DNA of 35,214 nt, taken from assembly GCF_001194135.2 (NCBI RefSeq), contig NC_068984.1, forward strand, positions 93,974,318 through 94,009,531, in the 5' to 3' direction. Position 1 is the first letter of the stretch. The number at the start of each line of letters is the position of its first letter. The DNA comes from Octopus bimaculoides. Its lineage: Eukaryota. The notes below the pieces were generated by a model. The model searched no databases, was not told where the DNA came from, and saw nothing but the letters and a program-made list of their open reading frames with translations. Made by a program: the position numbers and the translations under genes. This document shows positions 651 to 34,994 of the stretch, in pieces.

Positions 651-1038
651 GTCTCACACACACAGCAACATTACACACACACACATGCTGCTCTCTCACA
701 CTAACAAAAGAACTTCACATACACACCACACTTTCTGTCTAGCATACTCACTATAAAAAGATAGCGTCTATTTCTTTTTGGCAACATGTGTTTTGTGTGT
801 AATGTTGCTGTGTGTGAGAGAGAGAAAAAAAGAAAGAAAGAGAGCTAACTGGCATGTGTTTGTAAGGGAGGGAGAGAGAGAGAAGGTATTTTTTCCTTTT
901 TGCTTGTTGTTTGCTGCTTACCACACAACTCCCACTTTTTCTTTACATTTTTTTTGTGTTAGACGCTGGCAAACAAAAAGTTTCTCTCCTTCACGCACAA
1001 ACTTCGAAATTGGTAAAAGTTATGGTTGAAAATCGATT

Positions 1039-7352: not shown

Positions 7353-7403
7353 TATCTATCTATCTATCTATATATATATATATAAAGAAAACAGAGAAGT
7401 ATT

Positions 7404-7940: not shown

Positions 7941-8058
7941 TATATATGGGCAATGTCTGATGATTGTGCTGGGACATCAGATGTGTTATAAAACCATGTT
8001 TGGCATATGAAACTAATAGTAGCACATATTGTGTTTATTAAATAATAATTATATACAT

Positions 8059-8330: not shown

Positions 8331-8618
8331 TCATCATTGTACTTGCAACTATGTTGTGATATCCAACTTCAAAAGCTTTAGTTGACCGTGTTGACCATAG
8401 TATTTATTTCAGTCTAGTACTTAATTTATTGATATACATTATTCAGAAAAGTCAAGATACAAAGAACAGATTCCAAGTAAGAAGTGTTAGCTGTTTTAGC
8501 TGAAAATGCGTGCTGTTTGGAATATTTGAAAATAATTCTTGTATAAAACAAATCTGATTAAAAACTGGAATAATTATTTTGACTTTATGCAATGAAGTTT
8601 ATTTCTAACACATCTTAC

Positions 8619-8731
8619 CGCATTATGGTTCCTGAATTGTTTATGCCTTCACCAGCAGCTTTCTGTATAGCGTTGTGTTTTGATTGCAACCGAGCAAGAC
8701 GATTACAGCTAAGTGTGTATTCCTTAAATTT
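8619..8731 (-). CDS. SRGAP: srGAP-family coding exon (end of F-BAR extension); not in the ORF track
   Basis: gtattctag|AAA TTT AAG ... ATG CG|gtaaga; 113 nt, phase 0/2; KFKEYTLSCNRLARLQSKHNAIQKAAGEGINNSGTIM(R) matches srGAP KMKEY...N...KLQAKHD..QK.LGE. I found no downstream (RhoGAP) exon in 1-8618. Confidence 0.9.
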
Positions 8732-9109
8732 CTAGAATACATTTAAAATTAATGAATAAGACAAGTGATTATCACAGTAAATATTTTTTTAAATAACTAA
8801 TATAACTCTACCAAGGTGAAATTAAATATAAAGTAAAAAATTTTCACCAAACTAATTTATTATAATTTTCTGAGAACCTTAGTCATATAATTTTACATTT
8901 TCAAATAAGATACAAGCTTTTGATAACACAAAATAGACTTTTAAAGAAACCTTTTAGGATCCTAATTTAAATTTATAACTGGCTATTGAAAGCAAGGAGT
9001 AAAAATTAAGATAAAATAAAGTCTTTTTAATTTAAAATTAATAAAGATTTTTGACTGAGGATTCTGGAAAGAATAAGTTAAGAAAAAAAAAAACCCCAAA
9101 AAAACTTAC

Positions 9110-9280
9110 AGAAAGATAATAAGACTCCGTCTCCAAGCGATCTGCTTTGTGTTTTGCAGCCTCATGGGGAGACTTTGGTGGAGGAGGGTTATCAGTTAAG
9201 AAGAGGAGTGTCACATCGTGATCGTTCACAGAGATCATTTTCATAAGGGAGTTTTCGGCAGTCTCAAGTGTTTTCCACAA
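9110..9280 (-). CDS. SRGAP: srGAP-family coding exon (F-BAR extension)
   Basis: cttttctatgacag|TTG TGG AAA ... CTT TCT|gtaagt; 171 nt, phase 0/0; LWKTLETAENSLMKMISVNDHDVT...KADRLETESYYLS (srGAP KT.E......D.DV....ETE.FY). Confidence 0.9.
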
Positions 9281-10199
9281 CTGTCATAGAAAAGTGAAAG
9301 AAATGTAATATAATTAGCTTGAATTTCACTAACCATTCAACAGAAATTAAAGAACTTAAAGAACTTCAATGTTTTACTTTTGTTCTCACTGGAACATTAT
9401 GTAAATAGCCAACAGTCATTTACCTCAATCTAGTAGATAAAAGTGGTTTCTGATACAAAAAGTTATTCGAAACAATCCCAATAGAATTCAGTATAATTCT
9501 TTGGGATAAGAAAACTTAAGCAGATGTTCAGAAGTTAACCAAAGAATAAAAAGAATTGGAGGACGAGCTAGATTAGTCATTTAGAAATGTAAAAGATGAA
9601 AGAAAAAATCCTTAAAAAGTTATAAGTGAAAACAACAGGTAGTGACTTTGAAGTTGAACTCTAAACTTGCAAGTTCAAATCCTGCTACAAGTATAATATG
9701 GTATCTTTGAAAGACATATATTTGACCGCAGCTAGCACAATTTGATTTATTGACACCACAAGTATCACCCAACTATATAAAATAATTTATTTTTAGAGTC
9801 TGAAAGTGAAGTGTTAGTCACAATACTTTTTAAATCAAGATTTGGTATTATGAATATTTTGGTTAAAATATAGCAATTACAAAGTTATATGGTTGGTTGA
9901 GTAAAAAATTCAAATACTACAACAAAACTAAACATTCTTCATCAAATTGATTAGCAGAGATTAATAATTATAAAGGCAAAATACTTTTAATAATGCATTT
10001 AATCAACACTTTTGATCATTACAAGATACAGAAAATAATTTAAACCTGATCACTTCTTAATCATATACAAAGCTCATGCCAGAAAACTGCTTACACATCT
10101 ACTACTAAAATTACACAGGCTCTAAAATGTCAAAGAAGATTGTGTGGCTGCTTGCAAACTCTCTCTCTCTCATTAACAGATCTCACCCACTGGATTTGT

Positions 10200-10430
10200 A
10201 AGCCAGTAGATGAGACATGTTAGTGAGAGTTAGCAGGTTACATACTGTTTCATACCTCTTCCACCATGACAAGTATAACCTTCTGTGGTTCTTAAGTAGC
10301 AATATACCATGTTTGTTCCAGCCCACCTGATGCATCCATCTCTCCTACACTCATTATTCTTGTTACTCATCCCACAGACATATCCAATCTTTCCCCCTTC
10401 AAATCTGCAACACTCTCCACTTCAGCTTTA
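10200..10430 (-). mobile_element. Very old LINE ORF 3' fragment (RTE-like)
   Basis: Degenerate minus-strand translation ...KIGYVCGMSNKNNECRRDG..IRWAG...EGYTCHGGRG resembles RTE C-termini; weak. Confidence 0.3.
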
Positions 10431-10939
10431 TATTAAATGTTTTTAACAAAAATATGACTATTGCTCAATTACTGATTCAACCATGCAAGCCGATTTAGGT
10501 ATATAATTTTTTCAGTTTAATATATATATTTTTGGCAAAACAGTCAAAAACTGTTTGAGTATATTCATAATCATAGCCAATTTTTTTTTAAAAATCAATA
10601 CATTTTTGGCAATAATCTTCAAGAATCTGTTGTAGCTGAGAAGCAAAAAAAAAAAAGACGATATAAGAGTTTAAGTTCCACTACAATAGTTGTGTTGGAT
10701 ATTTAAAGTAGGGATGTTTCTTATCTATTAAACAATTCCAAAGGTTTCCAGTATTAAAAAACAAACAAACAGAAAACAAAACAAAACAACAAACAAATGA
10801 ATTCAGAGTAATTTCTTTTTCTGTGAAGACCAATAGTTTTAAAATCTAAAGTATAAATTTATATAGAAACATAACAGGCAACAATGACATTAATGAATGC
10901 TTCCTAAGCCAGAAGAGTAAAGTAATATCCTTTACTAAC

Positions 10940-11032
10940 TTCATCATTTTCTAAGTGTACACCTTCTAATCGTGCTTTTAAGGTTTCACAGCGATGGGTC
11001 ATTTCATCCACAACTGCATTGATAGAGCGTGC
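10940..11032 (-). CDS. SRGAP: srGAP-family coding exon (F-BAR extension); not in the ORF track
   Basis: ttttttcctcttttaag|GCA CGC TCT ... GAT GAA|gttagt; 93 nt, phase 0/0; ARSINAVVDEMTHRCETLKARLEGVHLENDE aligns to srGAP ELVQRCQQLQSRLSTLKIENEE. Confidence 0.88.
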
Positions 11033-11202
11033 CTTAAAAGAGGAAAAAAAGAATATTTAGTCATCACATACATTGAAATTAAAACAAAAATGTTTTAAGA
11101 CAAAATGTTTAATTCATATTTTATTTATAGTGAAGAATTACATATTGTTAAAAACAATAATGGCTACAGAGTTGCAAGAAATAAAATCTTAAAATATTAT
11201 TG

Positions 11203-11260
11203 ATGGTGGTGCCCCAACATTACCACAGCCTCTGGGCTGTAACAAGAAAAGATTAAAAGA
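11203..11260 (+). mobile_element. Isolated CR1/L2-type LINE/SINE 3' tail
   Basis: ggtggtgccccaacattaccacagcctctgggctgtaacaagaaaag; homologous to the tails at 4621-4668 and 20851-20891. Confidence 0.5.
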
Positions 11261-12157
11261 ATATATTTTTCAAAACAATAATGTACGAAAAATAGACTGA
11301 TTGAAAGCATTTGCTGGACTGAAGTTCAGATGTGAAAGTTAAGAATAAGTTGGTTCTGCCAAATTTCCCAAACATGATGCAACAAAACAAAGCGGAAGCT
11401 TTTATGTGCTTGTTTACAGCTAAATTTTTCATTAACAACATCCTACCATTTTAAAAATGAAAGGAAAATATATAACTATGAAAACACAATACTAGATACA
11501 CTATGCCTTGTCAGGATACTCATGAGTGTTGCTGGTAACATGTAACCCAGGATGACCTGTTGCATGCTCAGGTTGTCAGTGACTAAACTGGTAAATCTAC
11601 TGAGCCTATTTGATGAGGAGGCTGATTTTTGGACACACTGCAAGATGAAAACAAAACCTGTCAAAGGGTGGACAAACTCAGGAGAGTCAATGGTCATCCA
11701 ACTGCATGTACATATACATGTTTAAGAGGCATGTGATGACTGGAGTTTTTGGTAGTCAAGTTTCAATAGGCAGAAAGGAAATGTCCAGCAACACTGCTGT
11801 AGAACATATACTTCAGAGCATAATGAGATACATAGATTATCCTGATCATTTCACTGCAGAACCCCTAGTTATCTTAGCCACACCATATCATAAGACTAGG
11901 AAATCAGAGATGAGAGGTGAGAAATGGAACAATTTTCCTTCATTATAAATTAAGACTGAAAAAGTCAGCTGGTGATGAGAGAGCAGCAATTCAAACAGAA
12001 AGAGAGGAAACATCATATGATCAACAGAGAAGACAAGAAAACAATACTTTTTTCTGTTATATATCAAATAAATGTCAGGAAGGAAAAGTATAGTAGATCC
12101 ATTGTTTATATGGGCATATTATGACTATAAATCTTTCAATAGAAATTTATGTCTCAC

Positions 12158-12379
12158 CTCATCTCCTTTATATGGTTGATACTCAAACTTTTTTGGTAAC
12201 ATGAACATAGCATTGTGTAACTCAAGGAACTTTTGTTTGTCTGCCCGAGCATCAAGACCTTGGATGCATTGATTCAGTCGGTCAATAGCTCTCTGGTGAG
12301 AGTTACGTAACTGTTCGTGGGATGAAAGATACATTTTCATAGTTCGAGCAACACAACTATGGTAACCAAAATTCATACA
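12158..12379 (-). CDS. SRGAP: srGAP-family coding exon (F-BAR C-terminal part)
   Basis: ccttacag|TGT ATG AAT ... GAT GAG|gtgaga; 222 nt, phase 0/0; CMNFGYHSCVARTMKMYLSSHEQL...LDARADKQKFLELHNAMFMLPKKFEYQPYKGDE matches srGAP C.DLGYH...DKQ..ME....F..P.KFEFQPH.GD. Confidence 0.93.
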
Positions 12380-12439
12380 CTGTAAGGAAAAAAGAAGTAT
12401 AAATATTTAAAATCAGTGTCTATGATAAATGTTAGAACA

Positions 12440-13140
12440 AATTCCACAACCATCCTCAATTACTACCACTTAAACTCACAAACCATGACTTTTTTGTAGG
12501 AGAGATAGTATACAATCAATTATCTTAACTTCACTTTCAATAAAGGTTTCAAAACTTCCAAAGCCACTTAAGTCATTTGTACTGTGTAGAGAAAGTGGCA
12601 TTACTGAGAGAGCTGCATACAAGTGGTTTTCACACTGAAGGGGAAATTCAACCTCATAGATTCTCTGCATTCCAATTGGCCTGTTCGTTCAAATGAAAAT
12701 TGATTGAATGAGCTCATCTCATTCACAAGAATCTATGCCAATCAACTAAGAATACTATCACATGTCACCATCACTCACTGGACAATTCAACTGAAATGAT
12801 CAGACTGAAGACACAGCATGCTTCTTCAACATGATGGCACTCACCTCCACATCATTAAGTTGACCAATAATGCTATTTAAGAGCTCAGTTACGAAGTTCT
12901 ACTACACTCACTGTATTCTCCTGATATACTGCTTACTGCTTTCATATTATCACTTTTTATAGTTGTTTGCCAACAGTTTGCAAGGCATTTTGTTCAACAA
13001 TGACATGGAGCTGAAACTATGGCTTGATAAATTCTCCCAGTCAAGATCTAGTGATTTTTACCATCAAGGCACTAACAAGCTAGCAGAATGTTGGTAAGTT
13101 GTGAACAATAAAAGAGAATGTTTTATTGACAAGGTTGTTA
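12440..13140 (+). mobile_element. Highly decayed, internally deleted mariner
   Basis: Broken frames ESGITERAAYKWFS (HTH region), MLLQHDGTHLH, LYSPDI, WLDKFSQSRSSDFYHQGTNKLAECW*VVNNKRECFID. No convincing TIR pair. Confidence 0.7.
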
Positions 13141-13362
13141 TAACTGTTAATGAATAATAAGGATTAGAATACATTGAACAAAAAAAAAAGAGAAAAAAAA
13201 AACGAACAAATTTATCTCATAATATTAGTTACTTCATCATTAAACATGACAAAAAGTAACCTTTTGCTCAAATTAAATTGAAATTTAGATTTTAAGCCTA
13301 TATTCTGTAAATAGTTTGCTACTGGGATGCTAGGTTTCAATATAGATTTTGTAAAGCTATAT

Positions 13363-13535
13363 CATCATCATTTAACATTTGGTTTCCATGGTAGCATGTG
13401 TTGGACAGTCTAACAGGGGCTGGCAAGGCTGGGAGCTGTACCAGGCTCAATTGTCTGTTTTGAATGGTTTCTACAGATGGATGCCCTTCCTAATGCCAAC
13501 CACTTTACAGAGTGTACTGGGTGCTTTTAGGATCA
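13363..13535 (-). mobile_element. RTE 3' tail fragment
   Basis: catcatcatttaac...tttccatggtagcatgtgttggac...gtttctacagatggatgcccttcctaatgccaaccac; homologous to 4108-4570 and 21249-21430. Confidence 0.75.
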
Positions 13536-13733
13536 TCAAGTACCTTGCAAGACAAAAAAGGCAAAACCCCTCAACTGGGAGTAAAGAGTTATATTGAGGA
13601 GGGGGCTTTGTAAATGATACCATAAAGATGAAAATCAAAATCAAGATAAAAAGTCTTTAAAAGATAAAATAATAATAAATGGATAATGATAATAATGATG
13701 ATAACAGTAATGAACATGAACTTTTTCACTTAC

Positions 13734-13862
13734 ATCCATAAGGTCTGTGATATCATCAGAGTAATATTTATTGATGGCAGCATTAGCAGACTCTATACAT
13801 AAAAGATAATCATTTCGTGCTTTCAAAGCCTTTAATTTGTTCTCATTGTATTTGTGTTTCCG
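13734..13862 (-). CDS. SRGAP: srGAP-family coding exon (F-BAR)
   Basis: tttgtag|CGG AAA CAC ... ATG GAT|gtaagt; 129 nt, phase 0/0; RKHKYNENKLKALKARNDYLLCIESANAAINKYYSDDITDLMD matches the srGAP KYxENKLKAxKARNEYLL...KYY..D..DL.D motif. Confidence 0.93.
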
Positions 13863-14749
13863 CTACAAATAGAAAGTAAATATACCAAATATATAGGATA
13901 CATAAATAAAAGCTAATTTGAACATGACTTCTTGTGATATTCCTCCTGCCAAAGCCAGCAATGATTTTCATTTATTTATTTTATGAAATAGCCAAATTGT
14001 AAGAGACAAAAAAGCAGAGAATGAAATAAAATACAAAAAAGGTGAAGAAAGAGAAAGGAGAAAAAGAGTCATAGAGAAATCAAGAAAAAGTGAGGAAGAG
14101 AAAATTAAAGAAGTGAGAATTAAAGATACATCTATTTAAGAATAAACAAGAACAAGGAACCTCCAATGTAGTTGTGCAACTACTGCAAACAGCATCTGGA
14201 TCTTGCTTAAACCATACCCTACTGTGGTCAGTAAAGGATACACTTGGACAATGTAGTTTCTGATATGTCAAAAAAAACAAACAAACAAAAAAACAACCTA
14301 TGATCAAAGATTGGAATGCAGGTTAGAAGCTAAAAACATTTTAATAAATTAGAAAGATGTTTATCTTGATTAACAATGCATAATCATTCTTATAAGGCCT
14401 AATTCTTTAGGATTAGAAGTCTAAGAGCATCTAAAGGTTTCATGAATACTCTATTGTCCAATTCTTCCTTAGAAATGACTGAATTCTGACAAATAGTAAT
14501 TGTATGTGAGCATGTGCTTATGTATTTTGTGATAAAATAAGGACTAATAGAAATATCAAAGCACTTTTGTTGAATTTAAACAGGTTAAGGCATTTGCAAC
14601 CCCTAATGCCAGGAAACATGAAGTCAATGAAATTTGACAGTAGAGCATTTATTTATCGTCAAACAAGACTAAACTCAATTTTGTTGAATAACTACATGAG
14701 AAAAAATTTGGAAAAAACAGACAGAACATTGGATTAATGATATTGCATG

Positions 14750-16177
14750 TCTATAATATAAATCCCGGTGTGTGTGTGCGCGCATGCGTGTGTGTGTAAA
14801 AGATTATAACGGCTGTGTTTTTCAACTGATTTTCTCCAAACTGGGAACATGCATTACTTACATTCCAGAGATGGTTTTAGACTCTTAAAATTTTTCACAT
14901 AATGAGTAACAGGCCCCATGGGGGTAGAAAATAGCTATTCCTGGAGAAGGGAGGTAACTCTTTGCAAAGTAACTTTCAGAAACTGATTGTCTTCTTTACA
15001 TCCATTGGTCAAAAAATCATCACAATCTCATCTAATATATAAAATAGAGATGTGTGTGTATTCACTTTTCACATGTATCTCTATCTCTCTATCAATCGCT
15101 ATTGTTTTCACTGTAAGTTTTCAATTGCTATTTAAAAACAACAACAACAAATTACTGACAGAAAGAAGTTCACAATTACTGATGAAAGTAATTTCATACA
15201 TAATTTACTGACAGAAGTAACTTCAAAAATTTCACTCAAATCCGTACACTAAGTTAATTTCCCTAAAAATTACTTATTTACTTTGCAATGGTTTTGTGTT
15301 TTTCTATTGTTAACAGATTTTTTTCTGGTTCCTACGATACTGGCTCTTTGGTTCACTAAGTGACAAATTTTGCTTCAACCTGTACAATTCTTTATTTTCT
15401 GTAATAATTTCTTATTTACTTTCTGCCCATTGTATTAAGAAATATAATTTCCATTACCCAGTTATTTTCATTATTTACTATTTTCTGCACACATGTATTT
15501 CTGTATATGTATATAACCATGCCTAGAAGGAAAGTGTCAAATTTGTCTACAATGTCAAGGTCAGCCAAAAGAATGTCTCTGTCCAGGGAAAGAGAAACCG
15601 CTGCAGAAAGGGAAGCATACCAAGAAACAAACAGACTGAGCACTAAAAAAGTCAGAGCATCTCAAAGTGATGAACAGAGGTATGCATGGCTGACAAGGAA
15701 TAGGATCTCCACTGTAGAATGAAGAACAATTGCAACAGCTCAGAGAAGCAACTTCTATGAAGTAGCCTTCAATTAGCAATTCATTATGCAGATAACACTA
15801 CAGTTTCCATTGGTGCGATGACAACTGAGTGCATACATTGTAAAGCAAAGAAGTGACCTGGAGAGACACCTGCACTGTGCTGCAGTAGTGGAAAGGTTAA
15901 ACTCCCTGCAATCCCCCAACCTCCAGAGCCATTAAAGAAACTGTTGTCATCAACTGACTAAGATTCCAAGCACTTCCAAAACAAAATTAGACAATACAAT
16001 GCTGCACTACAGATGACATCATTTGAAGCCACAAGAAATTTAACTGAGCCAGGATTCATGCAAACTTTCAAGATCCAAGGTCATATTTATCATTGGATTG
16101 GCTCTGTACTATCTCTGTCAAATGAATCACCAAAATCAGCCTTTNNNNNNNNNNNNNNNNNNNNNNNNNNNNNNNNN

Positions 16178-16209
<32 letters not shown>

Positions 16210-16389
16210 TTGAAAACTTTCTTTTAACATTTCAATTAACATCTATGTTCTATGCTGGCATGGGTTGGAGAGTTATTAATGTAGAAAATTAGTATCTCAG
16301 CTACTAGCAGTTGAGACATGCGTAACCTATATGGCATTTAAAAATTTTATTATTCTCATTAACCCAGGCAATGCCGGTATATCTGCTAA
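14750..16389 (+). mobile_element. Internally deleted Helitron with N-terminal RepHel remnant
   Basis: 5' TCTATAATATAAA at 14750; ATG at 15519 (MPRRKVSNL...); CIHCKAKK*PGETPALCCSSGKVKLPAIPQPPEPL and QYNAALQMTSFEA...GFMQTFKIQGHIYHWIG. 3' hairpin-like acccaggcaatgccggt followed by CTAA (degenerate CTAG) at 16386-16389. A gap and (TA)n lie inside. Confidence 0.8.
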
Positions 16390-16463
16390 ACCAAGTATTA
16401 TAACATAAAACATGTTTGAATCTATTAGCATAAAATAACATAAATTAAAACTGAACAGCTTAC

Positions 16464-16619
16464 CTTTTCTTCCCTATGTTCAAATCTTTTTAAACTTCTT
16501 GTGGTTCCAGTTTTACCTTGGAGTTGTTGTTCAAGTTTCTTCTTTTGTGCTTGGACATCTTGCAATTTAGCTTCAGCATTCTTAGCTTCAGCTTGATATG
16601 CATGATAAGTCTTCATTGC
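16464..16619 (-). CDS. SRGAP: srGAP-family coding exon (F-BAR), first exon visible in window
   Basis: ttttgcag|GCA ATG AAG ... GAA AAG|gtaagc; 156 nt, phase 0/0; AMKTYHAYQAEAKNAEAKLQDVQAQKKKLEQQLQGKTGTTRSLKRFEHREEK resembles the srGAP MKTYHxY...AxxKL segment (recognised from memory). Confidence 0.9.
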
Positions 16620-17425: not shown

Positions 17426-17985
17426 TGGTGGTTGTCTACTCCTTACACAGAGTTTGACCACCTCCTGTACCTACACCTTAGCTCCTTCATGGTGTCTGAT
17501 GTGGCTTTTTAAACCAGACAGTGTTTTGAAAAAACACCCACACAGATTGCACCTCTGATTTGAACTACCAATACCTGCAGATAAGTTCTGCTCATTGTGG
17601 ATCTTAACATGTCTTTTATGACCCCCATTGGATTTGCAAGCCTTCTGGCATACACTACATTCAAATGTGTGCACAGACATATAGTCAGAACAGTTAGTTG
17701 AAGTTTGTTTCCCATGGGTTCGCAGGTGAGATTTGAGGCCAGCCAAAGACAGGCATGGTCTGTCACAGACTGTGCACACAAAAAGGTCTTTGTCATTCAC
17801 CTTCTCGATCTTAACATTCTTCCTTAAATATCTTTTCAGTCTTGCTTGCGTTATTCTGGCCTCTTCAAACGCTTTCATTCCATTCCACACATTTGTTCAC
17901 CATCCAACTCGATCCGAAGCGAGGGTTTCTATATCTTCTGGAACCATTCCAAGTGACTTCATAGTATTCCTTATGCCATCTTTAT
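17426..17985 (-). mobile_element. 5'-truncated RTE-type LINE 3' end encoding three C2H2 zinc fingers
   Basis: [51 protein letters not shown] is an RTE-type C-terminus. It is followed by CTVC..HLRTH, CSVC..HVKIH and CNLC..HIRHH; stop at 17471; (CA/TG)n on both sides. Confidence 0.75.
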
Positions 17986-19435: not shown

Positions 19436-20666
19436 TTGTGTTGTCCGGAAAGCTCGTGCCGATTTTTAAAGGAAAGAAAAAGGTCAATAAATACTTGCCA
19501 TTACATTTTTAATCAACCAAATATGAACCATTTTGTTGCACAATGCGTCACCATCTTTCCTTTTACTTGAAAATACCCTCTTCCAGAATTGAGGTGGTTT
19601 TTATGGCAAAGAATTCAAGGTATCTTTTTACGTCATCCAAAAAACTGGAATTTTTACCATTAAGACTATTCTGCAGAGACCTGAACAAGTGGAAATCCGA
19701 AGGAACAATATCTGGTGAATATGCAGGGTAGGGTAACACATCCCAGCCGAGCTGCAGCAATTTTTGTCTGGTTCCCCCCAAAATGTGCGGTCTTGCGTTA
19801 TCATGTTGGAAAACAACACACTTCCTGTTGGCCAATTCTGGATGTTTCTCTTGAATTGCTGCTTTTAACTCGTCCAGTTGTGTGCAGTATTTCTCATAAT
19901 TGTCTGGTTACTTGGGGGAAGCTCATAGTACAGAATTCCTTTCCAATCCCACCAGACACAAAGCAAGATTTTTTAGGGTGAAAACCCATTTTTGGGGTGG
20001 CTAAGGGTGGCTCATGTCGCTTACCTTGGTAGATAATACATTTCTCATCACCTGTCACAATTTGCTTTAAAAAAGGCGCGTTTTCATTCCGTTTATAAAG
20101 CAAATCTCAGATGGAAATGAGATCCAAAAGGTTCTTCTCACTCAACTCAGGTAGTACCCAAACATCGTAGCGATTTCTGTACCCAAGATTTACCAGGAGC
20201 TCATGAATGATGGATTTTGACAAGTTGAGGCTTTCTGCCAATTCTCGGGTTATGCAATGTGGGTTATCCTCAATTAATGACTTGATTTGGTCATCATCTG
20301 TAGTGGATGGTCTGCCTGATCGCTCTTTATTAATAAGGATACAATCTCCAGCACGGAACCCTGCAAACCACTTCCGTACAGTTCTTTAAGATAAAGAAAC
20401 ATCACCACAAACTGTGCATATTTCTGTGGTTGCTTGTGTGACATTTTTCCCTTTACGGAAAAAAGAAAAGCATCAAGTGCCGAAAATGAACTTTATTATC
20501 TTCCATTTTAAAGGGTTACAGAATTAACACAGGTTATAGAAACATAAACCTTCTTCCAAGAAAAGATAGCTTAAACTGTGCTCTAAATGGAGGCGTAGTC
20601 AAATACTATTTTATAAGTCGAAAGGTAAGCTACTATAAATCGGCACAAACTTTGCGGACAACCCAA
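19436..20666 (-). mobile_element. Near full-length mariner (D,D34D) with broken transposase
   Basis: TA target sites on both sides. TIRs ttgtgttgtccggaaagctcgtgccgatt (19436) and rc ttgggttgtccgcaaagtttgtgccgatt (to 20666). Motifs IVTGDEK, QHDNARPH, YSPDIVPSDFHLF; 1231 bp. Confidence 0.92.
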
Positions 20667-21248: not shown

Positions 21249-23533
21249 TCATCATCATCATCATCTAACGTTCGCTTTCCATGCTAGTGTGGGTTGGACG
21301 ATATGACTGAGGACTGGCAAGCCAGAAGGCTGCACCAGGCTCCAATCTGATCTGGCAGAGTTTCTACAGCTGGATGCCCTTCCTAACGCCAACCACTCCG
21401 AGAGTGTAGTGGGTGCTTTTGCGTGCCACCGGCACGAGGGCCAGTCACACAGTACTGGCAACGCTCAAAAAGGTGTTTTTTACTGGCCATGCTCAAAAAG
21501 GTGTTTTTTACGTGCCACCTGCACAGGAGCTAGTCCAGCGGCACTGGCAATGACCTCGCTCGAATGAATTCCTAACGTGCCACCAGCACAAGGGCTAGAA
21601 GGTGATGCTGGTAACGATTATGCTCTAATGGTGCTATTTACGGGCCACTAGCACGGAAGCCAGACAGCTGCTCTGGCAATGAACAAGCTCGGACAGTGCT
21701 GTTAGTGCTCCACTGGCACAGGTGACAGTCATCGAGCATGCTTCGATTTCGATTTCACTTGCCCCAACAGGTCTTTGCAAGCAGAGTTTAGTGTCCAATG
21801 AAGGAGAGGTTGGCATGGGCGCCAGTCGTCAAATTCAGTTTGATTTCGATTTCAGATTTCAAATTTACTTGCCTCAACAGGTCTTCACAAGCAGAGTTTT
21901 TAGTGTCCAATGAAGTAAAGATACGAATATGTGAGCTGGCTACACTTCTGGCAGAGGTCACTTGCTTTGCTGGGTCTTCTCACGTACTGCATATTTCCAA
22001 AGGAACCGGTCACTGGTCATTGCCTCGGTGAGGCCTAAAGTTCAAAGGTTGTGTTTCACCACCTCATCCCAGGTCTTCCTGGGTCTTCTGTCGAGTATGC
22101 ACACTGACATTACTCATCCATCAGAGCATACTGGCTTCGTTTCTTGTGAGCTGACGCATGTCCTCACGGCCCATGTTTCACTGCCATGTAGCATGGCTGT
22201 TCGTACACATGCATCATACAGTTTGCCTTTTACTCTAAGTGAGAGGCCCTTTGTCACCAGCAGAGGTAAAAGCTCTCTAAACTTTGCCCAGGCTATTCTT
22301 ATTCTAGCAGCTACACTTTCAGTGCACCTTCCCCCGCTACAAACCTGGTCACCTAGATAGTGGAAGCTATCAACTACATCCAGTTTTTCTCCCTGGAATG
22401 AGACGTAAGTTGTTTCCTGCACATTTTCAGTGTTTATTGCTCCTGAGCATCTGCCACATACAAAAACTATCTTGCTAGTTAGCCTTCCTTTGATATTGCT
22501 GCACCTCTTATGTGTCCATAGCTTACACTGGGTACATCTTATGGAGTTTCTACCTACGCCTTTTCTACAGATCGAGCAGGGCCATTTACCTGAAGGGGTT
22601 TGTGTTTTGTCTACCTTCCTACTTATTAGGACTTTGGTTTTAGCTAGGCTTATTCTAAGACCCTTCGATTCTAGTCCTTGCTTCCACACCTGAAACTTTT
22701 CCTCTAGTTCTGATAGTGACTCAGCAATTAGTGCAAGGTCATCAGCATAGAGGATCTCCCAGGGGCATCCTATCTCGAATTCCTCTGTGATCGCCTGGAG
22801 GACTATGATAAATAGGAGGGGGCTGAGGACTGAACCTTGGTGGACCCCTACCTCTACCCGGAATTCTTCACTGTACTCGTTGCCAACTCTCACCTTACTG
22901 ACAGCGTCTCTGTACATGGCTTGCACTCATTTATCCCTAGTTTCCTCATTGACCACCAGATAAGGGAGCGGGGGACCCTGTCAAAGGCTTTCTCCATGTC
23001 AACGAAAGCCAGGTACAGAGGTTTATCCTTGGCTAGGTATTTCTCCTGCAGCTGTCATACCAGAAATATGGCATCAGTGGTGCTTTTCCCTGGAACGAAC
23101 CCAAACTGCATCTCATCTAAACTGACTCTCTCCCTAATTAGTTGGGCTATGACCCTCTCGGTGACCTTCATTACCTGGTCCAACAACTTGATACCTCTGT
23201 AACTGTTTATGTCTAAAGCGTCACCTTTACCTTTGTAGCAGTTGACAATGACTCCTTCGTGTATCACCTGATTAACTATATGGGTGACTAGGCTATAGCC
23301 GACACTGACAGATATTTTGAGCATCTCTGCAATGATTACTGATGTGCCAGGGGCTTTCCCTGTCTTTATACTCTTGATTGCTTTATCTACCAAGGTACTG
23401 TCAATTAGGATAGCTGGTCCCTCTGTTGGGGCGACATGTGGCAGACTCTCTTCTTCCCATTCATTCTCTTTATTAAGCAGCCTTTCATAGTGGCATCTCC
23501 AAACCTTTCTCTTTGCAGCCTCGTTTAGTGCAA
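21249..23533 (-). mobile_element. RTE-clade LINE 3' half (RT + about 700 bp 3' UTR)
   Basis: YLAFVDMEKAFDRVP, GVHQGSVLSPLLF, ILYADDL, CRKGVGRNSIRCTQCKLWTHKRC, GRPRKTW. The UTR has tandem subrepeats and a (GAT)n tail. Confidence 0.93.
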
Positions 23534-23613
23534 ATACATATATATATATATATATATATAAATATACATGCATAAATCAAAAACTTAAAATTAAAACAGA
23601 ACACAAAGGATTC

Positions 23614-23714
23614 TGCGGTACACGTGTTTCAAGCTTTATACACAAACAGTTGTTGCATCATTATATGAGTATATAATTGATAGACAGGATGGTATAAAGC
23701 TATCTTCAGCCCCA
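23614..23714 (-). ncRNA. Type I hammerhead ribozyme at the 3' end of PLE1
   Basis: tgggg CTGAAGA t AGCTTTATAC [50 nt] GTATAAAGCT t GAAAC ACGT GTA ccgca: intact catalytic words, perfect 10-bp stem II, palindromic stem III, stem I 4/5 paired. Predicted cut between 23619 and 23618. Confidence 0.82.
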
Positions 23715-24682
23715 AATACATTCTTTCCCAAGATTATATCACAAAGAAGGAATCACAAAGAAAAAAGAAAAAGAGAGAGAAACAGGAGAGAGAAAAAGGG
23801 GAAGTCCACTTGGTATTATTCATTGTAATATGTTTATCCTTTAAGTTGATGCATTTACATAAAAGTTTGTTGGTATTCCGAAATCTGTCCATATTGTGCC
23901 ACAATTCAGGGTAGAGTGAAAGATAAATAAACATAACTAGCTATATGAAATAGGAGAGGATCCCAAAAAGAAAGAAGTTGGATGTTAAAACAATACAAAA
24001 TACGAAGAAAACAATATAAAATACACAAATGGGGGGGGGGGGTATAAGAAAAAATATGGATAATAAAGTAAGATGCATATAAAAGATTTAGTAGGGTTGG
24101 AGAAAGGTAGTAAAGGAAAACACAAGGAAATTGGATAAATAAATAGAAGAAATAGAAAAATAAAAGAAATAAAATGAAATAACAGAAGTAAAGAGAAAGG
24201 GGAATAAGAAAAAACCTAAAAGTAGAAAAAGAGGTAAATAGAAATAAAGATAGATAAAGAGATCTAAAGGGATGAGTTCCTAAATGACAGACATACATGA
24301 TGCTGTCTGGGCCAAGAATAGTGAGNNNNNNNNNNTAAATAATGTCAAGCTAGAATAAACTTGAAATAATATATCCTTGTGGTGAGTGGTCAGTTTAGCC
24401 AAAGTACATCACTACAACTTAAGTATACAAACTTATCTATTATATTGGTACATTCACTTACCTAGAGGATAAAAGGATGATGGAAGTGGTAAATGGTAAT
24501 TAGCACATAAAAACTAAACAATGAATAATTAGAAAATGTAAAAAAAGTTAGAAAATATAAAGGGGAAAACTAGGGTTGGAAGTTAAAAATTCAAAATACA
24601 GAGTATTGGGAACATTTCAACCGCAGTAATATAATAGTAATATTGTATTACATAATGTAATAGTAATAAAAAATAACAACAC

Positions 24683-24730
24683 CAACAACAACAACAACAA
24701 CAATAATAATAATAATAATAATAATCATAA
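24683..24730. repeat. (AAC)n(AAT)n microsatellite inside the PLE1 3' UTR
   Basis: Direct reading of the sequence. Confidence 0.9.
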
Positions 24731-27700
24731 TAAAAAAATAGTGGTTTGAAAAGGTACATTGATTAGAAGAATATTGTGATTGGGGAAATTACGGCTTATC
24801 TATTTGTGTAAATTATATGGCATAGTGAAACTACTACTATAATCGTGTTTTAATCATTGGGTATTGGTATATGAATATAAAGGAGTCTGGGTTTGCATCT
24901 CCTAATTAATTCTAGTATAATATTATTATAAAAACATTGCAGTAAAGAGTGTTATTTAATGTTACCCTTATGTATTGTAGTGTTATTCGAAATCTTAGAG
25001 TCAGTGACTAAAAAGTTTAGAAATTTTCCTGTAAAGGTGGGATTATGGATCCCGGGTTATTAAATATGTGTGTATATTATGGGGTCAGAATCTAGCTATG
25101 CAAGGGTAAACTGAATAATTAAGGTAAATAGTTAAGTTGGGGGTAGATTACGGGCTTCGTTAATTCAATGTCTGAATGGTGGCAGGATGGATCTGATGTG
25201 GGAGTTACCAATGAGAGAAGATTTAGAAGTGATTATAACTTAAAAGAGGGGACTTAGGGATTATAGTATCTAAAGGTTTTAATCATTTTATGTATACAAG
25301 ATGGTTTGAAATCTGATCTCTTATTAATTAGCTTGTTTTTATCAGGGAATCTAATGATTTTCAAAAGTTCTAAGGAACATAACTGGCAACCAGTTCTATT
25401 ATTTCTATACGTTGCAGCCGATCCAACTATGGACCATCTAAGGTTAATGTTAATGTTTTCGTCTTTAAGTTCCCAAATTCTGAGATAATGAGGTGCTATT
25501 GGCCTTGTCTGAGTCTAAATTATGACCTGTGGTTATAGAACCTAGATTTCCAGGAGGAAGAGCACCCAAGGTAGGTGAGGGTGTTCGTTTCCGTAATTAT
25601 TTCGCAAGAGTATACTACGTTTTTTACTAGGCAGTTTCCACGTAAAGGACATGTTGATGTAGTTACACAATTGCACCCGATTTTATAGTTGCTAGGCCGT
25701 CTTATGTTTTCATTTGGGGGGTAACTGCTTATAGGATTGTTATCTATGTTAGTTCTCGGGTGGTTAGGGTTTACGCCTACATTGTTGTTACTATTATTGT
25801 TGTTACCTCTATTTGGGTTGTTTGGAGCTTCACCACTTCTATTCATTCTGCCGTTAACACTGGTACTATATTTATTATTTCTATCAGCAATATTATTAAT
25901 TATATTGGAATCGTGGCCCGTATAATTATTATCGTGATTACTATTTGAGGTGGAGTTGGATATTCTATTATTAGTAGCAGTATCATTATTTAACGTGGAA
26001 GTACTATAAGGTGTGCCGCTATCCTGTGTTGGGTCTAGGTTTAGTGATTCATCTATTGTACTGTGATTTGCTATTTGGATATGGTTATAAGGCCTAATAT
26101 TGTTGTTGTCATAATTATTATTATTACTAGCATTATCAACAATGTTATAATTTTCAGGAATATTAGTTTGTATACTATCAGTAGAAGTTCTTGGATTATC
26201 GGAGTTAGGCTGATAATTATTATTTATTCTTAATCTAGCTTTTTTAGATATAAGGCATTTCATATTAGGGAGGGTTGAATATGAGATTCTAACAGTTTTA
26301 GTGGAAAAGATACTGTTATATTTGTGAGTGGGTGGAAAGTTCTTTGATATAATTGAAAATATTTTCTTACATAATCTACCTGTGACCGCTACATTGTATG
26401 GTATGTTATACCATATGTAGTTGCGTAATTTATTGTTACTTCGTTTAGTAATTCTTCTATTTCTATCGTTAGGGTTTTCTCTATTATCAGTACAATTTTT
26501 TTCTTTATGATTTTCGATCCTATGCCTATTTGTATTAGTACTGATTGTATCTGTTCTTTTGTTTTTGTTTTTATTCGACTTATTTTCTATACCACCATTT
26601 AGGGAATTAATTATAGATTTACTAATTTGATTACATGATGGGTTAATGTTCATGGATGATGTTTTAGACAGTTTACAATTTAACTTTTTAACAAAAGATA
26701 TTTTCTGGGAGTACCCAGTGTTAGAGAGGGCTTGATTGTAATGATGGGCATGATCTCTAAAAATGTTTTCATTCGAGGATAATTTAGTTAGTCTATCCGA
26801 AACAGCCTGGACAGTGGTATTAATTATAGAGGGAGGGGAGGGGGTGATTGGAAATTGTGCTAATGTAACTAGTAGTTTCTCCTGGCTTTCTGTAAGGGAA
26901 GTGAAGTCCTTTATCTAAGTCTAGTGTAGCATCTAAAAAATTAACAATCTTAGAGTTAGTCATAAATTCAAGTTTTAGATTAAAAGATTTCAAGAAATGC
27001 CTAATCTTTTTCTTAATTCTTTCTAGGGTACTTTTGCTATTGGTAGGGTATATGAATAGTGCATCATCTCTGTATAGACCCCACCCCCTGAAGGCCTGGT
27101 ACCTCCGAGAATAGCCTCTTAAGTAGAAAGGCTCCGACTAAGTCAGTTACCTGAGCTGAGTCACTCGAGCACAAAGCCACATTGAAGTTATCAGGGGTGT
27201 CAGACCTAGTCCAATTATTGTTTTCCTAGCTAAGAGTATTATATCAATTTTTTCTCTATCTATAAGAGAGAGGTTATGAGCATAAATTAGGGACTTATTC
27301 AATAGGATAGGAGAGATGCTTGCATAGTAATTCGATATGTCGAATTGTATGAATGAAAAGTTTTTCTTACACTTGATAGAGTTGAACCATTTTAGAATGT
27401 CCTCAGTATAAACCCATATGTTGAGTGGGATGTGAGGTTTAATTCGGGGAATTACTCCATCTAGAATTGTCTTCAGTCTGCCTATGTCTGACTTAGTTGG
27501 GCATATTAGCCTCACTTCTATGTTCTCTGGGAATCCTTTTTTATGGTCCTTAATGCTAATCCAAGGTTCCTGGGGGATGAGAGGTTCGGTCCTTTCTAGT
27601 AGATCTAGCTTAGTCATAACTTTTTTGATTTTGCTGTTGGTTTGTATGAGGTTATCTGTTGATGTAACTTTATATTTTCTATGGAGTTCCTTAATTATTA

Positions 27701-28206
27701 GTGATCTATACGTGTTATAGTCTACTTTATACCAGTTACGGGTTTTGTCGGCAGGTATGATTAGACTATCTTCATTTTTCAGTGAGTCTAAAAATTGCTT
27801 TAGTTTCTTCAAGTGGTTGTTACGAATAGTTCTATGTTTTCTGAGTTTAATTCTTTTGTTAAATTCAGGGATATCTTTTTCGAAGTCTTCTAATGCAAAG
27901 TTCGGTGGTGGGTTTCTTCTACTTTTGAATACTTTTATGTTTACGATATCTTCCTGGTTCCTGTTTGAGTTATGTTTATTTCTATTATCAAAGTGATAGG
28001 CAGCCCATCTAATTCGTCTAAGGAAATCTGTAGTCCTGTGGATAAGAGCCGTCATGTAAGCGTCATCAGTGTGCAGTGGCATGTTTTTGGGAAAGAAATC
28101 GGTGTGAATCCTTTGTATCATTGTTCATTCATCAAGTATTAAAAGTTGTCGTGGGTATGTAAAAACCAATGAAAGGGATAACATGAATCACGTAGGTAAA
28201 GCAAAT

Positions 28207-34567: not shown

Positions 34568-34620
34568 TATGTATACATATATATACATATACACATATAT
34601 ATATACAAATATATATATAC

Positions 34621-34854
34621 ATAAATTTAGTAAATGGAGTAAAACGCATTTGTTAACTGAATACTTTTATTTCCAACATATGTTTCGAAGATTACAAATT
34701 ATACCTTCCAGAGGAATAGGTGATGTTGATAAGAATGTAATCTTATCAACATCACCTATTCCTATGGAAGGTATAATGTGTAATATTCGAAACATATGTT
34801 GGAAATAAAAGTCTTCAGTTAACAAATGCGTTTTACTCCATTTACTAAATTTAT
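34621..34854. repeat. Near-perfect fold-back palindrome (114-bp arms, 6-nt loop)
   Basis: Arms 34621-34734 and 34741-34854, 4 mismatches. Each arm carries GAAAC ATAT GTT ggaaat (34675-34686 minus, 34789-34800 plus). Confidence 0.95.
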
Positions 34855-34994
34855 ATATTTACTCAAGTACCCAAAATAACAAGGAGTTTCTACCTCATAA
34901 ACAGGAGTTACACCACAGTCATTTTGTGATCTTTGCTACCCTGGCATCTATTAATCAATTGATTTTGTCCGAGTTAATTATTAACTAAGAGAAA

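What the first reader, a model, noticed from the sequence alone, without database searches (positions are those of the whole stretch)
23614..23714. Near-intact hammerhead ribozyme oriented to cut the srGAP pre-mRNA
Seen: canonical CUGAAGA and GAAAC...GUA, a perfect 10-bp stem II with an unusually long 50-nt loop, and palindromic stem III. Blemishes are a G-G mismatch in stem I (tgggg versus an expected tgcgg) and a U/U pair at the base of stem II. It lies on the same strand as srGAP, upstream of the first visible exon. Established: PLEs carry type I hammerheads in their pseudo-LTRs, and intronic hammerheads are known in animals. Inference: co-transcriptional cleavage could lower or reshape srGAP output or release PLE RNA from the host transcript; a dimer requirement could act as a safety catch.
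Basis: partly seen in the sequence, partly recalled or inferred. Interest (0 to 1): 0.7.

Follow-up and report, generated by a model that had tools for sequence, protein, structure and literature searches.

The report
Relic retrotransposon hammerhead in srGAP intron
The motif is a real hammerhead-ribozyme sequence, but it is the ordinary 3'-end ribozyme of a dead Penelope-like retrotransposon that landed, sense-oriented, upstream of the visible srGAP exons, and nothing shows that it cuts or regulates the srGAP transcript.

Summary
It is not chance: dinucleotide shuffles give 0.024 relaxed and 0.0005 strict hits per window.

Rfam finds no hammerhead here. That result is uninformative, because Rfam also missed the hammerheads in 20 related loci.

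The element on the same strand, with ORF remnants at 28124-25257, is a decayed Hydra-clade Penelope-like element (PLE). I fetched 72 related PLE loci from metagenomes. They carry type I hammerheads on the RT strand, upstream of the ORF and 85-465 nt after its stop, followed by a 31-112 nt tail and (TA)n. A covariance model built only from these relatives finds the candidate (26.1 bits, E about 1e-5). It also finds a second hammerhead at 7949-8029 (+).

- **U/U "blemish":** it is a subfamily trait, seen in 12 of 39 distinct relatives.
- **Real oddities:** the 72-nt helix II segment (10-29 nt in relatives), the G-G mismatch in helix I, a helix III one nucleotide short, and 1.5 kb between the ORF stop and the ribozyme.

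The srGAP orientation is confirmed, and intronic placement is inferred. Regulation of srGAP is unsupported. This is a new member of a known kind, of low to moderate interest.

The parts
23611..23717 (-). Whole type I hammerhead motif (candidate A)
   Evidence: Sequence read. Descriptor hit. Family covariance model R1: 26.1 bits, E about 1e-5.
23710..23716 (-). Helix I, 5' strand (uuugggg)
   Evidence: Pairs with 23612-23618 at 6 of 7 positions; G-G mismatch at 23712/23616.
23703..23709 (-). Core box CUGAAGA (C3-A9)
   Evidence: Matches the invariant columns of 35 relatives.
23631..23702 (-). Helix II segment of 72 nt: U-U at 23702/23631, 10-bp perfect stem 23692-23701 with 23632-23641, and a 50-nt loop 23642-23691 that holds an inner AT-rich hairpin
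   Evidence: The same segment is 10-29 nt in relatives.
23627..23630 (-). Core box GAAA (G12, A13, A14, A15.1)
23620..23627 (-). Helix III, the palindrome ACACGUGU (A15.1 to U16.1)
   Evidence: As a monomer it is 2 bp plus a 4-nt loop, +1.4 kcal/mol. Two copies form an 8-bp intermolecular helix. It is one nucleotide shorter than the 9-10 nt of relatives.
23618..23619 (-). Predicted cleavage site, between A17 (23619) and C1.1 (23618)
   Evidence: Position follows from the core numbering. Cleavage itself was not tested.
23612..23618 (-). Helix I, 3' strand (ccgcaga)
23568..23611 (-). T-rich tail of about 50 nt between the cleavage site and the microsatellite; taken as the 3' terminus of the PLE insertion
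   Evidence: Relatives show the same layout: a tail of 31-45 nt or 92-112 nt, then (TA)n.
23538..23567 (.). (TA)n microsatellite, the presumed insertion target
   Evidence: Hydra-clade PLEs insert into (TA)n (PMC8557442 section 11).
23718..25256 (-). Non-coding stretch of 1.5 kb between the PLE stop and the hammerhead. It holds (ATT)n/(GTT)n repeats, CT-rich sequence and a 10-N scaffold gap at 24326-24335
   Evidence: No PLE coding similarity. Relatives have 85-465 nt here.
25257..28124 (-). Decayed Hydra-clade Penelope-like element ORF (RT plus GIY-YIG). It covers residues 5-695 of 706-aa relatives, with an in-frame stop near 27140, frameshifts near 26840 and 25520, and an N-rich insert at 25729-26174
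8618..16619 (-). srGAP exons (F-BAR region, matching human SRGAP2 residues about 163-490), at about 16536-16619, 13734-13862, 12161-12382, 10886-11020 and 8618-8737
   Evidence: PDB 5i6j match, E = 9e-46. tblastn.
7949..8029 (+). Second hammerhead of the same family (candidate B), antisense to srGAP: CUGAUGA-U-[45-nt helix II segment]-U-GAAAC-UAAUA-GUA
   Evidence: Model R1: 30.1 bits, E about 6e-7. Sequence. Its minimum-energy fold is not the hammerhead fold.
22097..23533 (-). 5'-truncated LINE fragment (RT plus PHD) abutting the (TA)n. It is not part of the hammerhead element
   Evidence: Self-BLAST against the copy at 30522-32682. Pfam RVT_1 and PHD.

Best explanation
The motif is the 3'-terminal type I hammerhead ribozyme of a Hydra-clade Penelope-like retrotransposon (PLE). 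The PLE inserted, in the sense orientation, into a (TA)n microsatellite in what is most likely a large srGAP intron.

In this PLE clade a hammerhead sits on the coding strand upstream of the ORF and again shortly after its stop, a short tail away from the element's 3' end. The literature proposes that it processes PLE transcripts, working as a dimer through its short palindromic helix III and/or with help from the PLE protein.

Here the carrier element is dead. The ribozyme keeps every invariant core base. It has a mismatch in helix I, a helix III one nucleotide short and a greatly expanded helix II, and it has no partner copy nearby. I therefore read it as a decaying molecular fossil with little or no self-cleavage and no demonstrated effect on srGAP.

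What is shown: the motif, its family membership, the PLE context and the strand. What is inferred: intronic placement, low activity and lack of host function.
For: **Motif**
- It is present and non-random.

**PLE on the same strand**
- Its translation aligns to residues 5-695 of 706-aa relatives.
- It carries the Hydra-clade marks listed in PMC8557442 section 11: PADKTRNWYKV (DKT), RW[A/K], CNCVTTSTC (CxCX5C), GIY-YIG, CxxC and CxH.
- TA-rich microsatellites lie on both sides.

**Related loci**
- 72 related loci were fetched.
- The descriptor found same-strand hammerheads in about 45 of them.
- The hammerhead lies upstream of the ORF and 85-465 nt after the stop, with repeat units of 2.39-2.76 kb.
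- After the 3' hammerhead come 31-45 nt or 92-112 nt, then (TA)n. The window has about 51 nt, then (TA)n.

**Family structure**
- The family alignment shows changes on both sides at 20 of 22 pairs.
- Model R1, built without the window, scores the candidate 26.1 bits, E about 1e-5.
- 62 of 63 model hits lie on the RT strand.
- U-U flanking helix II, followed by GAAAC-AC.GU-GUA, recurs in relatives L008, L009, L014, L031 and others.

**Decay and dimer need**
- The ORF has an in-frame stop and frameshifts.
- Monomer helix III is unstable at +1.4 kcal/mol. The dimer gains about 13 kcal/mol through an 8-bp helix III.
Against: - The hammerhead lies 1548 nt after the PLE stop, against 85-465 nt in relatives. 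That interval contains a 10-N scaffold gap, so the link to this particular copy is not secure.
- No 5' hammerhead is seen upstream of the ORF. That region is microsatellite followed by a 760-N gap.
- Pfam and PDB sequence searches do not recognise the PLE proteins, even intact relatives. The clade assignment therefore rests on motif-level agreement with the published description.
- Activity was not measured, so "inactive relic" is an inference.
- The relatives were collected with a pairing descriptor, which inflates the apparent covariation.
Confidence: 0.85

Rival explanations
1. It is a working intronic ribozyme. Transcribed as part of the srGAP pre-mRNA, it self-cleaves, alone, with PLE protein, or paired with transcripts of other copies. 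This lowers or reshapes srGAP output.
For: - It is sense-oriented and upstream of srGAP exons.
- All invariant core bases are intact.
- The dimer fold is favourable.
- Precedents exist for intronic ribozymes: hammerheads in RECK, CTCL and DTNB (PMC6155905) and the CPEB3 ribozyme, whose inhibition raises CPEB3 protein (PMC10919898).
Against: - No partner copy with a matching helix III is in the window. Candidate B is on the other strand and its helix III is not complementary.
- Helix I has a mismatch and helix III is shortened relative to the family.
- No loop-loop tertiary contact is possible, because helix I is open and helix II is very long.
- PLE hammerheads show low activity in vitro, and the anole Poseidon PLE (PAc) hammerhead cleaves only with its protein and leaves no RNA-seq ends (PMC4209133, PMC11167929).
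- Slow hammerheads in introns did not impair splicing (PMC2995048).
- The carrier PLE is dead.
- Intron membership is unproven.
Confidence: 0.07
2. It does not belong to the PLE copy at 25257-28124. It is instead a separate, heavily 5'-truncated PLE copy, or a short non-autonomous hammerhead-bearing element. The scaffold gap joins two unrelated pieces.
For: - The spacing of 1.5 kb is about 1.1-1.4 kb longer than in relatives.
- A 10-N gap lies at 24326-24335.
- Candidate B sits alone, with no PLE coding sequence nearby, between (TA)n at about 7365-7385 and TA-rich sequence near 8045. This shows that solo hammerhead-bearing fragments exist in this genome.
- Most PLE hammerheads in other genomes are solo copies (PMC4209133).
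Against: - It has the same strand and order as expected for the 3' end of the copy at 25-28 kb.
- No hammerhead or (TA)n closer to that ORF's stop would mark a different 3' end.
- One relative has 465 nt between stop and hammerhead, so the spacing varies.
Confidence: 0.3
3. It is a chance resemblance: an AT-rich inverted repeat that happens to be flanked by CUGAAGA and GAAAC.
For: - Rfam hammerhead models give no hit.
- The fold is no more stable than shuffled sequence (z = -0.63).
- The window is rich in AT palindromes.
Against: - The shuffle expectation is 0.0005-0.024 per window.
- An independent family model gives E about 1e-5.
- The layout relative to a PLE and to (TA)n is correct.
- It shares subfamily quirks with relatives.
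- Rfam misses all true relatives too.
Confidence: 0.02

Closest known systems
Hammerheads of Penelope-like elements (Cervera and De la Pena 2014, PMC4209133), specifically the Hydra clade of PLEs (Craig et al. 2021, PMC8557442)
   Same: - Type I topology on the element's sense strand, near its 3' end.
- Short palindromic helix III that implies dimeric action.
- Helix II longer than the canonical 4 bp, a short open helix I, and an extra base after A9.
- The host element has the DKT, RW[A/K] and CxCX5C motifs and a (TA)n target.
   Different: - The helix II segment is 72 nt, against 10-29 nt in 39 distinct relatives.
- Helix I has a G-G mismatch.
- Helix III is 8 nt, against 9-10 nt.
- Only one hammerhead is visible for this copy.
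- It lies 1.5 kb rather than about 0.1-0.5 kb after the ORF.
Conserved intronic hammerheads of amniotes (RECK, CTCL, DTNB; Rfam HH9/HH10; reviewed in PMC6155905)
   Same: A type I hammerhead, sense-oriented, inside or apparently inside a host gene intron, and thought to derive from retroelement hammerheads.
   Different: - Those are conserved across species, have loop-loop tertiary contacts and are found by Rfam models.
- This one sits in a decayed transposon, lacks such contacts and has no Rfam hit.
- Its conservation across species could not be tested.
CPEB3 intronic HDV-like ribozyme (PMC10919898)
   Different: It is a different ribozyme class, it is conserved in mammals, and its activity has been measured. 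No activity is known here.
Animal non-LTR retrozymes (PMC7229834; bioRxiv 10.64898/2026.07.22.740005)
   Same: They carry type I hammerheads related to PLE terminal repeats and are non-coding.
   Different: - Retrozymes are tandem arrays of short units, each with a hammerhead. Here there is a single copy with no tandem repeat.
- In vertebrates, retrozymes are reported to be depleted from introns.

Membership tests
Hammerhead ribozyme, type I | Conserved core: C3 U4 G5 A6 N7 G8 A9, and G12 A13 A14 | tested here: met
   CUGAAGA at 23709-23703 and GAA at 23630-23628.
Hammerhead ribozyme, type I | A15.1-U16.1 pair, and a cleavage-site base H17 that is not G | tested here: met
   A at 23627, U at 23620, A17 at 23619, giving a GUA triplet.
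Hammerhead ribozyme, type I | Three helices around the core, with helix I open (5' and 3' ends) and helices II and III closed | tested here: met
   Helix I has 6 of 7 pairs, helix II has 10 bp, helix III has 2 bp plus a 4-nt loop. Helix III is unstable as a monomer.
Hammerhead ribozyme, type I | G10.1-C11.1 closing pair of helix II (typical, not absolute) | tested here: not met
   The closing pair here is U-U. The same U-U occurs in 12 of 39 distinct relatives, against G-C in 19, so it is a subfamily trait.
Hammerhead ribozyme, type I | Match to the curated Rfam hammerhead models | tested here: not met
   No hit at gathering score or at E<=10. The same models miss the hammerheads in all 20 related loci searched, so the test has no power for this clade.
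Hammerhead ribozyme, type I | Site-specific self-cleavage | not testable with these tools
   This needs in vitro transcription or RNA end mapping.
PLE terminal-repeat hammerhead | Lies on the sense strand of a PLE, near its end | tested here: met
   It is on the same strand as the PLE ORF at 28124-25257, about 51 nt before the (TA)n, as in relatives. 62 of 63 family hits are on the RT strand.
PLE terminal-repeat hammerhead | Present in both flanking repeats of the element | tested here: not met
   No hammerhead lies upstream of the ORF. That region is microsatellite followed by a 760-N gap, so absence is not proven.
PLE terminal-repeat hammerhead | Short palindromic helix III, enlarged helix II, and an extra base after A9 | tested here: met
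   Helix III is ACACGUGU, helix II has 10 bp, and U 23702 follows A9. These are the features listed in PMC4209133.
Hydra-clade Penelope-like element | DKT instead of DKG; an RWK motif; a CxCX5C linker; a C-terminal GIY-YIG with CxxC and CxH; no CCHH | tested here: met
   The window copy has PADKTRNWYKV, RIRWAAY, CNCVTTSTC, VVYSCEI...YLG, CQLC and CIH. Relatives show RWK, DKT, YRDDG and CNCRxKxxC. Absence of CCHH was judged by eye only.
Hydra-clade Penelope-like element | Insertion into (TA)n | tested here: met
   The 3' flank is (TA)n at 23567-23538 and the 5' flank is TA-rich microsatellite from about 28294. Relatives show the same.
Hydra-clade Penelope-like element | Short element, under 3 kb | tested here: not met
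   The span from about 28.2 kb to 23.57 kb is about 4.7 kb. The excess comes from an N-rich insert in the ORF and the 1.5-kb 3' stretch.
Hydra-clade Penelope-like element | Recognisable RT and GIY-YIG domains in general libraries | tested here: inconclusive
   Pfam and PDB sequence searches find nothing, even for intact relatives. The clade is described as highly divergent (PMC8557442).
Domesticated intronic hammerhead (RECK/CTCL type) | Conservation at the orthologous intron position across species | not testable with these tools
   No related host genomes are available. The protein database lacks this organism's srGAP.
Domesticated intronic hammerhead (RECK/CTCL type) | Location inside the host gene's transcription unit, in the sense orientation | tested here: inconclusive
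   Sense orientation is confirmed. Exons for SRGAP2 residues 1-162 are not in the window, so they should lie beyond 35214, but this is an inference.
Non-LTR retrozyme | Tandem array of short units, each carrying a hammerhead | tested here: not met
   It is a single copy, with no direct repeat of the region.

The most novel reading that the evidence does not exclude
The U-U-closed, long-helix-II hammerheads of this host (72-nt and 45-nt helix II segments in the two copies seen) could be a functional lineage-specific variant that current Rfam models cannot see. The sense copy at 23.6 kb could then cleave nascent srGAP pre-mRNA, when PLE protein or transcripts of sister copies are present. That would tie the output of a neuronal-development gene to transposon activity.
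Probability: 0.05. Interest if true: 0.65.

Novelty: new member of a known kind. Interest (0 to 1): 0.27.

Why it matters
As it stands, the finding mainly corrects an annotation. A convincing-looking ribozyme next to a gene turns out to be transposon baggage, and a "defect" (the U-U pair) turns out to be a family trait.

Two practical points follow:
- Rfam's hammerhead models miss the whole set of Hydra-clade PLE hammerheads. Genome scans that rely on Rfam will under-count ribozymes in invertebrate genomes. A clade-specific model built from 35 sequences found them readily.
- If the sense copy were shown to cleave in vivo, it would be a natural test of whether a weak, dimer-dependent intronic ribozyme can affect a long-intron gene. 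Published work with engineered ribozymes suggests it would not.

Tried and rejected
- **Rfam at three stringencies:** no hammerhead. I rejected this as evidence of absence after Rfam also missed the hammerheads in 20 related loci.
- **Second copy in the window by sequence:** none found. Candidate B was found only with the family model.
- **Pfam on the PLE ORFs and on intact relatives, and PDB sequence and profile searches:** no hits, so they gave no help with classification.
- **The search for homologous proteins with the PLE RT:** one hit on a 1.3-kb contig. With the srGAP exons, no protein from this organism. I therefore could not identify the organism, fetch the gene or obtain sister copies.
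- **Supplementary files of the two key papers:** not held, so I could not compare with the published Hydra-clade hammerhead sequences.
- **Alignment of the flanks of candidates A and B:** only a 37-nt CT-rich patch matched, with no real homology. The two copies cannot be shown to be one family beyond the ribozyme itself.
- **Descriptor hit at 6734-6619 (-):** it lies inside a LINE ORF, has a 3-bp helix II and is not found by the family model. I judged it chance.
- **TTGATAA...GAAACATATGTT at 34726-34805 (+):** I considered it as a U3-A8 variant hammerhead for the plus-strand PLE. I rejected it because the box lies inside a perfect 16-bp hairpin, helix I does not pair, and the model gives no hit.

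Full report
**1. The observation**

On the minus strand the sequence reads uuugggg-CUGAAGA-u-agcuuuauac-[50 nt]-guauaaagcu-u-GAAA-CACGUGU-A|ccgcaga.

A simple descriptor scan recovered it with a 10-bp perfect helix II set one base in from each core box, a 2-bp helix III with a 4-nt loop, and 6 of 7 helix I pairs. So the motif, the G-G mismatch (23712/23616), the U/U (23702/23631), the 50-nt loop (23691-23642) and the palindromic helix III are all really there.

**2. Is it more than chance?**

In 2000 dinucleotide-preserving shuffles of the window, a descriptor loose enough to accept the candidate gave 0.024 hits per window. With helix II of at least 8 bp it gave 0.0005.

The fold is not unusually stable (z = -0.63). 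The signal therefore lies in the arrangement of core boxes and helices, not in the energy.

Rfam gave no hammerhead hit at gathering score on the whole window, at E<=10 on 551 nt, or at E<=10 on 117 nt. I later found that Rfam also misses every hammerhead in 20 related loci. This negative therefore reflects the models' coverage, not the sequence.

**3. What surrounds it**

The window is a draft animal genome with six N gaps and many TA/CA microsatellites.

- **srGAP.** On the minus strand, from 16619 down to 8618, lie exons matching the F-BAR region of SLIT-ROBO Rho GTPase-activating protein. They match PDB 5i6j (human SRGAP2) at E = 9e-46 and correspond to residues about 163-490. The tblastn probe was a human SRGAP2 sequence written from memory, so it is approximate.
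- **Missing exons.** No exon for residues 1-162 is found anywhere in 16.7-35.2 kb. Those exons should lie beyond the window's end. The hammerhead is therefore sense-oriented and most likely inside an intron of at least 18.6 kb. This is an inference, not an observation.
- **Transposons.** The interval 17-35 kb is packed with them. It holds mariner-like remnants, three LINE copies with RT and PHD domains, and two copies of an element whose translation shows RT-like and GIY-YIG-like motifs.

**4. The element is a Hydra-clade Penelope-like element (PLE)**

The minus-strand copy (28124-25257) contains:
- PADKTRNWYKV and RIRWAAY;
- a CNCVTTSTC linker;
- a VVY...YLG GIY-YIG core;
- CQLC and CIH motifs.

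It is flanked by TA-rich microsatellites.

Craig et al. (PMC8557442, section 11) define the Hydra clade by just these traits:
- DKG changed to DKT;
- an RWK motif;
- a CxCX5C linker;
- CxxC and CxH motifs;
- no CCHH motif;
- insertion into (TA)n;
- "canonical HHRs readily detected";
- hosts that include Mollusca.

Database support is otherwise thin:
- The only database homologue, P0001, carries RWK and DKT.
- Pfam and PDB sequence searches recognise neither the window copy nor intact relatives. The assignment therefore rests on these motifs.
- A 14-sequence alignment of relatives also shows a YRDDG catalytic box.

The window copy spans residues 5-695 of 706-aa relatives. It has an in-frame stop near 27140, frameshifts near 26840 and 25520, and a 445-nt N-rich insert. 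It is dead. The plus-strand copy (32719-34071) is 5'-truncated, and I found no hammerhead after it.

**5. Relatives elsewhere**

A scan of metagenome contigs with the RT alignment returned 72 loci.

- **Position.** In about 45 loci the descriptor found a type I hammerhead on the RT strand.
  - It lies upstream of the ORF.
  - Where the contig is long enough it occurs again one unit (2.39-2.76 kb) downstream, 85-185 nt after the stop (465 nt in one locus).
- **3' end.** After the 3' hammerhead the element runs 31-45 nt (or 92-112 nt) and then meets (TA)n. The window shows the same layout, with about 51 nt from the cleavage site to the (TA)n at 23567-23538.
- **Covariation.** Thirty-five distinct relatives align cleanly. 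They show changes on both sides at 20 of 22 pairs, 81% of cells paired against 59% in shuffles, and a sharp drop when partners are slid. Because I collected them with a pairing descriptor, part of this is built in.
- **Independent model.** A covariance model built from these 35 sequences, without the window, was run over the window with filters off. It gave exactly two significant hits:
  - 7949-8029 (+), 30.1 bits, E about 6e-7;
  - the candidate at 23611-23717 (-), 26.1 bits, E about 1e-5.
  - The next best hit had E = 0.23.
- **All loci.** Across all loci, 62 of 63 hits are on the RT strand. Nearly all relatives score 30-60 bits, with one weak hit at 20.9 bits.

**6. What the family comparison changes**

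- **U/U.** It is not a defect. Among 41 distinct core-intact hammerheads (39 relatives and the 2 window copies), the bases flanking helix II are G-C in 19 and U-U in 14, two of which are the window copies. The U-U relatives also share the U-[U/A]GC...GC[A/U]-U pattern and the GAAAC-AC.GU-GUA helix III seen here, for example L008, L009, L014 and L031.
- **Long loop.** It is a true outlier. The A9-to-G12 segment is 10-29 nt in relatives, against 72 nt here and 45 nt in the second window copy. With two of two host copies expanded, the expansion may be a lineage trait. I cannot test that with one window.
- **Helix I.** The G-G mismatch has no counterpart in the well-scoring relatives, whose first five helix I pairs are nearly always paired.
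- **Helix III.** It is 8 nt here against 9-10 nt in relatives, and the model places a one-base gap. This leaves 2 bp plus a 4-nt loop, calculated at +1.4 kcal/mol.

**7. How it most likely works, or worked**

In PLEs the hammerheads are proposed to cut long or tandem PLE transcripts, acting as dimers through the palindromic helix III (PMC4209133).

Measured activity is low. A Schistosoma PLE hammerhead cleaved weakly, and only as a dimer or trimer (PMC4209133). The anole Poseidon PLE (PAc) hammerhead cleaved only with its own protein, was dispensable for insertion in vitro, and left no RNA-seq ends (PMC11167929).

For this copy, cofolding two molecules gives -55.5 kcal/mol against 2 x -21.3, with an 8-bp intermolecular helix III. 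The hammerhead-consistent monomer fold (-20.2) is slightly worse than the minimum-energy fold. A partner is therefore needed, and none exists in the window. Candidate B is on the other strand, its helix III (ACUAAUAGU) is not complementary, and its own minimum-energy fold is not a hammerhead.

With an open 7-bp helix I and a very long helix II, there can be no loop-loop contact of the kind that makes natural hammerheads fast at cellular Mg2+. This last point is inferred from established knowledge summarised in PMC4209133.

**8. The srGAP idea**

Orientation is right and intronic placement is likely. The functional claim has no support.

- Published experiments found that a hammerhead cleaving within an intron left splicing efficiency unchanged, whereas a much faster HDV ribozyme blocked it (Dye 2006 and Fong 2009, as described in PMC2995048). 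A weak, dimer-dependent ribozyme in an intron of at least 18 kb should matter even less.
- The counter-precedents are conserved across species: the amniote RECK, CTCL and DTNB hammerheads (PMC6155905) and the CPEB3 ribozyme (PMC10919898). I cannot test conservation here, and this motif sits in a decayed transposon.
- A 2026 preprint reports that vertebrate retrozymes are depleted from introns (10.64898/2026.07.22.740005). That would fit mild selection against such insertions, not a host function.

**9. Open point**

The hammerhead is 1548 nt past the PLE stop, about 1.1-1.4 kb more than in relatives. The interval holds microsatellites, CT-rich sequence and a 10-N scaffold gap, and it has no PLE coding similarity.

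Either this host's family has a long 3' region, or the hammerhead belongs to a separate truncated copy or a short non-autonomous element. Candidate B apparently does, sitting alone between TA-rich tracts. I put about 0.3 on the second option. It does not change the main conclusion.

**10. Verdict**

The hammerhead motif is real and correctly described, and it is correctly linked to PLEs. It is an ordinary member of a published class (Hydra-clade PLE hammerheads). It shows signs of decay and has one unusual feature, the hyper-extended helix II.

The proposed regulation of srGAP is speculation that the present evidence makes unlikely, though it does not exclude it.

Noticed in passing
window 7949-8029 (+): A second hammerhead of the same Hydra-clade family: CUGAUGA-U-[45-nt helix II segment]-U-GAAAC-UAAUA-GUA. 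The family model scores it 30.1 bits, higher than the reported one. It is antisense to srGAP, in the intron below the exon at 8618-8737, with no PLE coding sequence nearby, and it lies between (TA)n at about 7365-7385 and TA-rich sequence near 8045. Its minimum-energy fold is not the hammerhead fold.
   Followed up: partly
loci L001-L072 (metagenome contigs): Rfam release 15 hammerhead models detected none of the hammerheads in 20 related PLE loci, even at E<=1. A model built from 35 of these sequences finds them at 30-60 bits. Rfam-based scans will miss this whole group.
   Followed up: yes
loci L008, L009, L011, L014, L015, L018, L019, L024, L031, L041, L052, L067: About a third of Hydra-clade PLE hammerheads (12 of 39 distinct relatives) have U-U instead of the usual G10.1-C11.1 closing pair of helix II. 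I could not check whether this is already described, because the supplementary files of the source papers are not held.
   Followed up: partly
window 25729-26174 (-): A 445-nt asparagine-rich, low-complexity insertion inside the PLE reading frame, between the RT and the endonuclease linker. The plus-strand PLE copy (32740-34104) also has N-rich runs.
   Followed up: no
window 6619-6734 (-): A weak hammerhead-like descriptor hit (CUGAUGA ... GAAA, helix II of only 3 bp) inside the endonuclease coding region of a LINE copy. The family model does not find it, and I judged it chance.
   Followed up: yes
window 34618-34691 and 34786-34857, also 1451-1523: A roughly 72-nt sequence is present as an inverted pair about 95 nt apart, with a third copy at the other end of the window (79-81% identity). 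The spacer holds a perfect 16-bp hairpin. It looks like a small MITE-like repeat next to a microsatellite.
   Followed up: no
window 4786-7352 (-), 22097-23533 (-), 30522-32682 (+): Three copies of one LINE family (apurinic-type endonuclease, RT, PHD finger), 69-82% identical to each other. The middle copy is 5'-truncated exactly at the (TA)n that ends the hammerhead element.
   Followed up: partly
window 19566-20385 (-): Mariner/Tc1-like transposase remnants (helix-turn-helix region and a ...VFQHDNARPH... catalytic region), broken by frameshifts. This identification is by eye only.
   Followed up: no
window 17471-17890 (-): A 139-aa open reading frame with several C2H2 zinc fingers (Pfam zf-C2H2, E about 1e-8 to 1e-9), in the same orientation as srGAP and about 0.9 kb upstream of the first visible srGAP exon. 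Whether it is a gene fragment or part of a transposon is unknown.
   Followed up: no
window 415-662 (+): A direct repeat: 415-572 and 507-662 match at 94% identity over 158 nt, offset by about 90 nt. A further partial copy lies in inverted orientation at 809-878.
   Followed up: no
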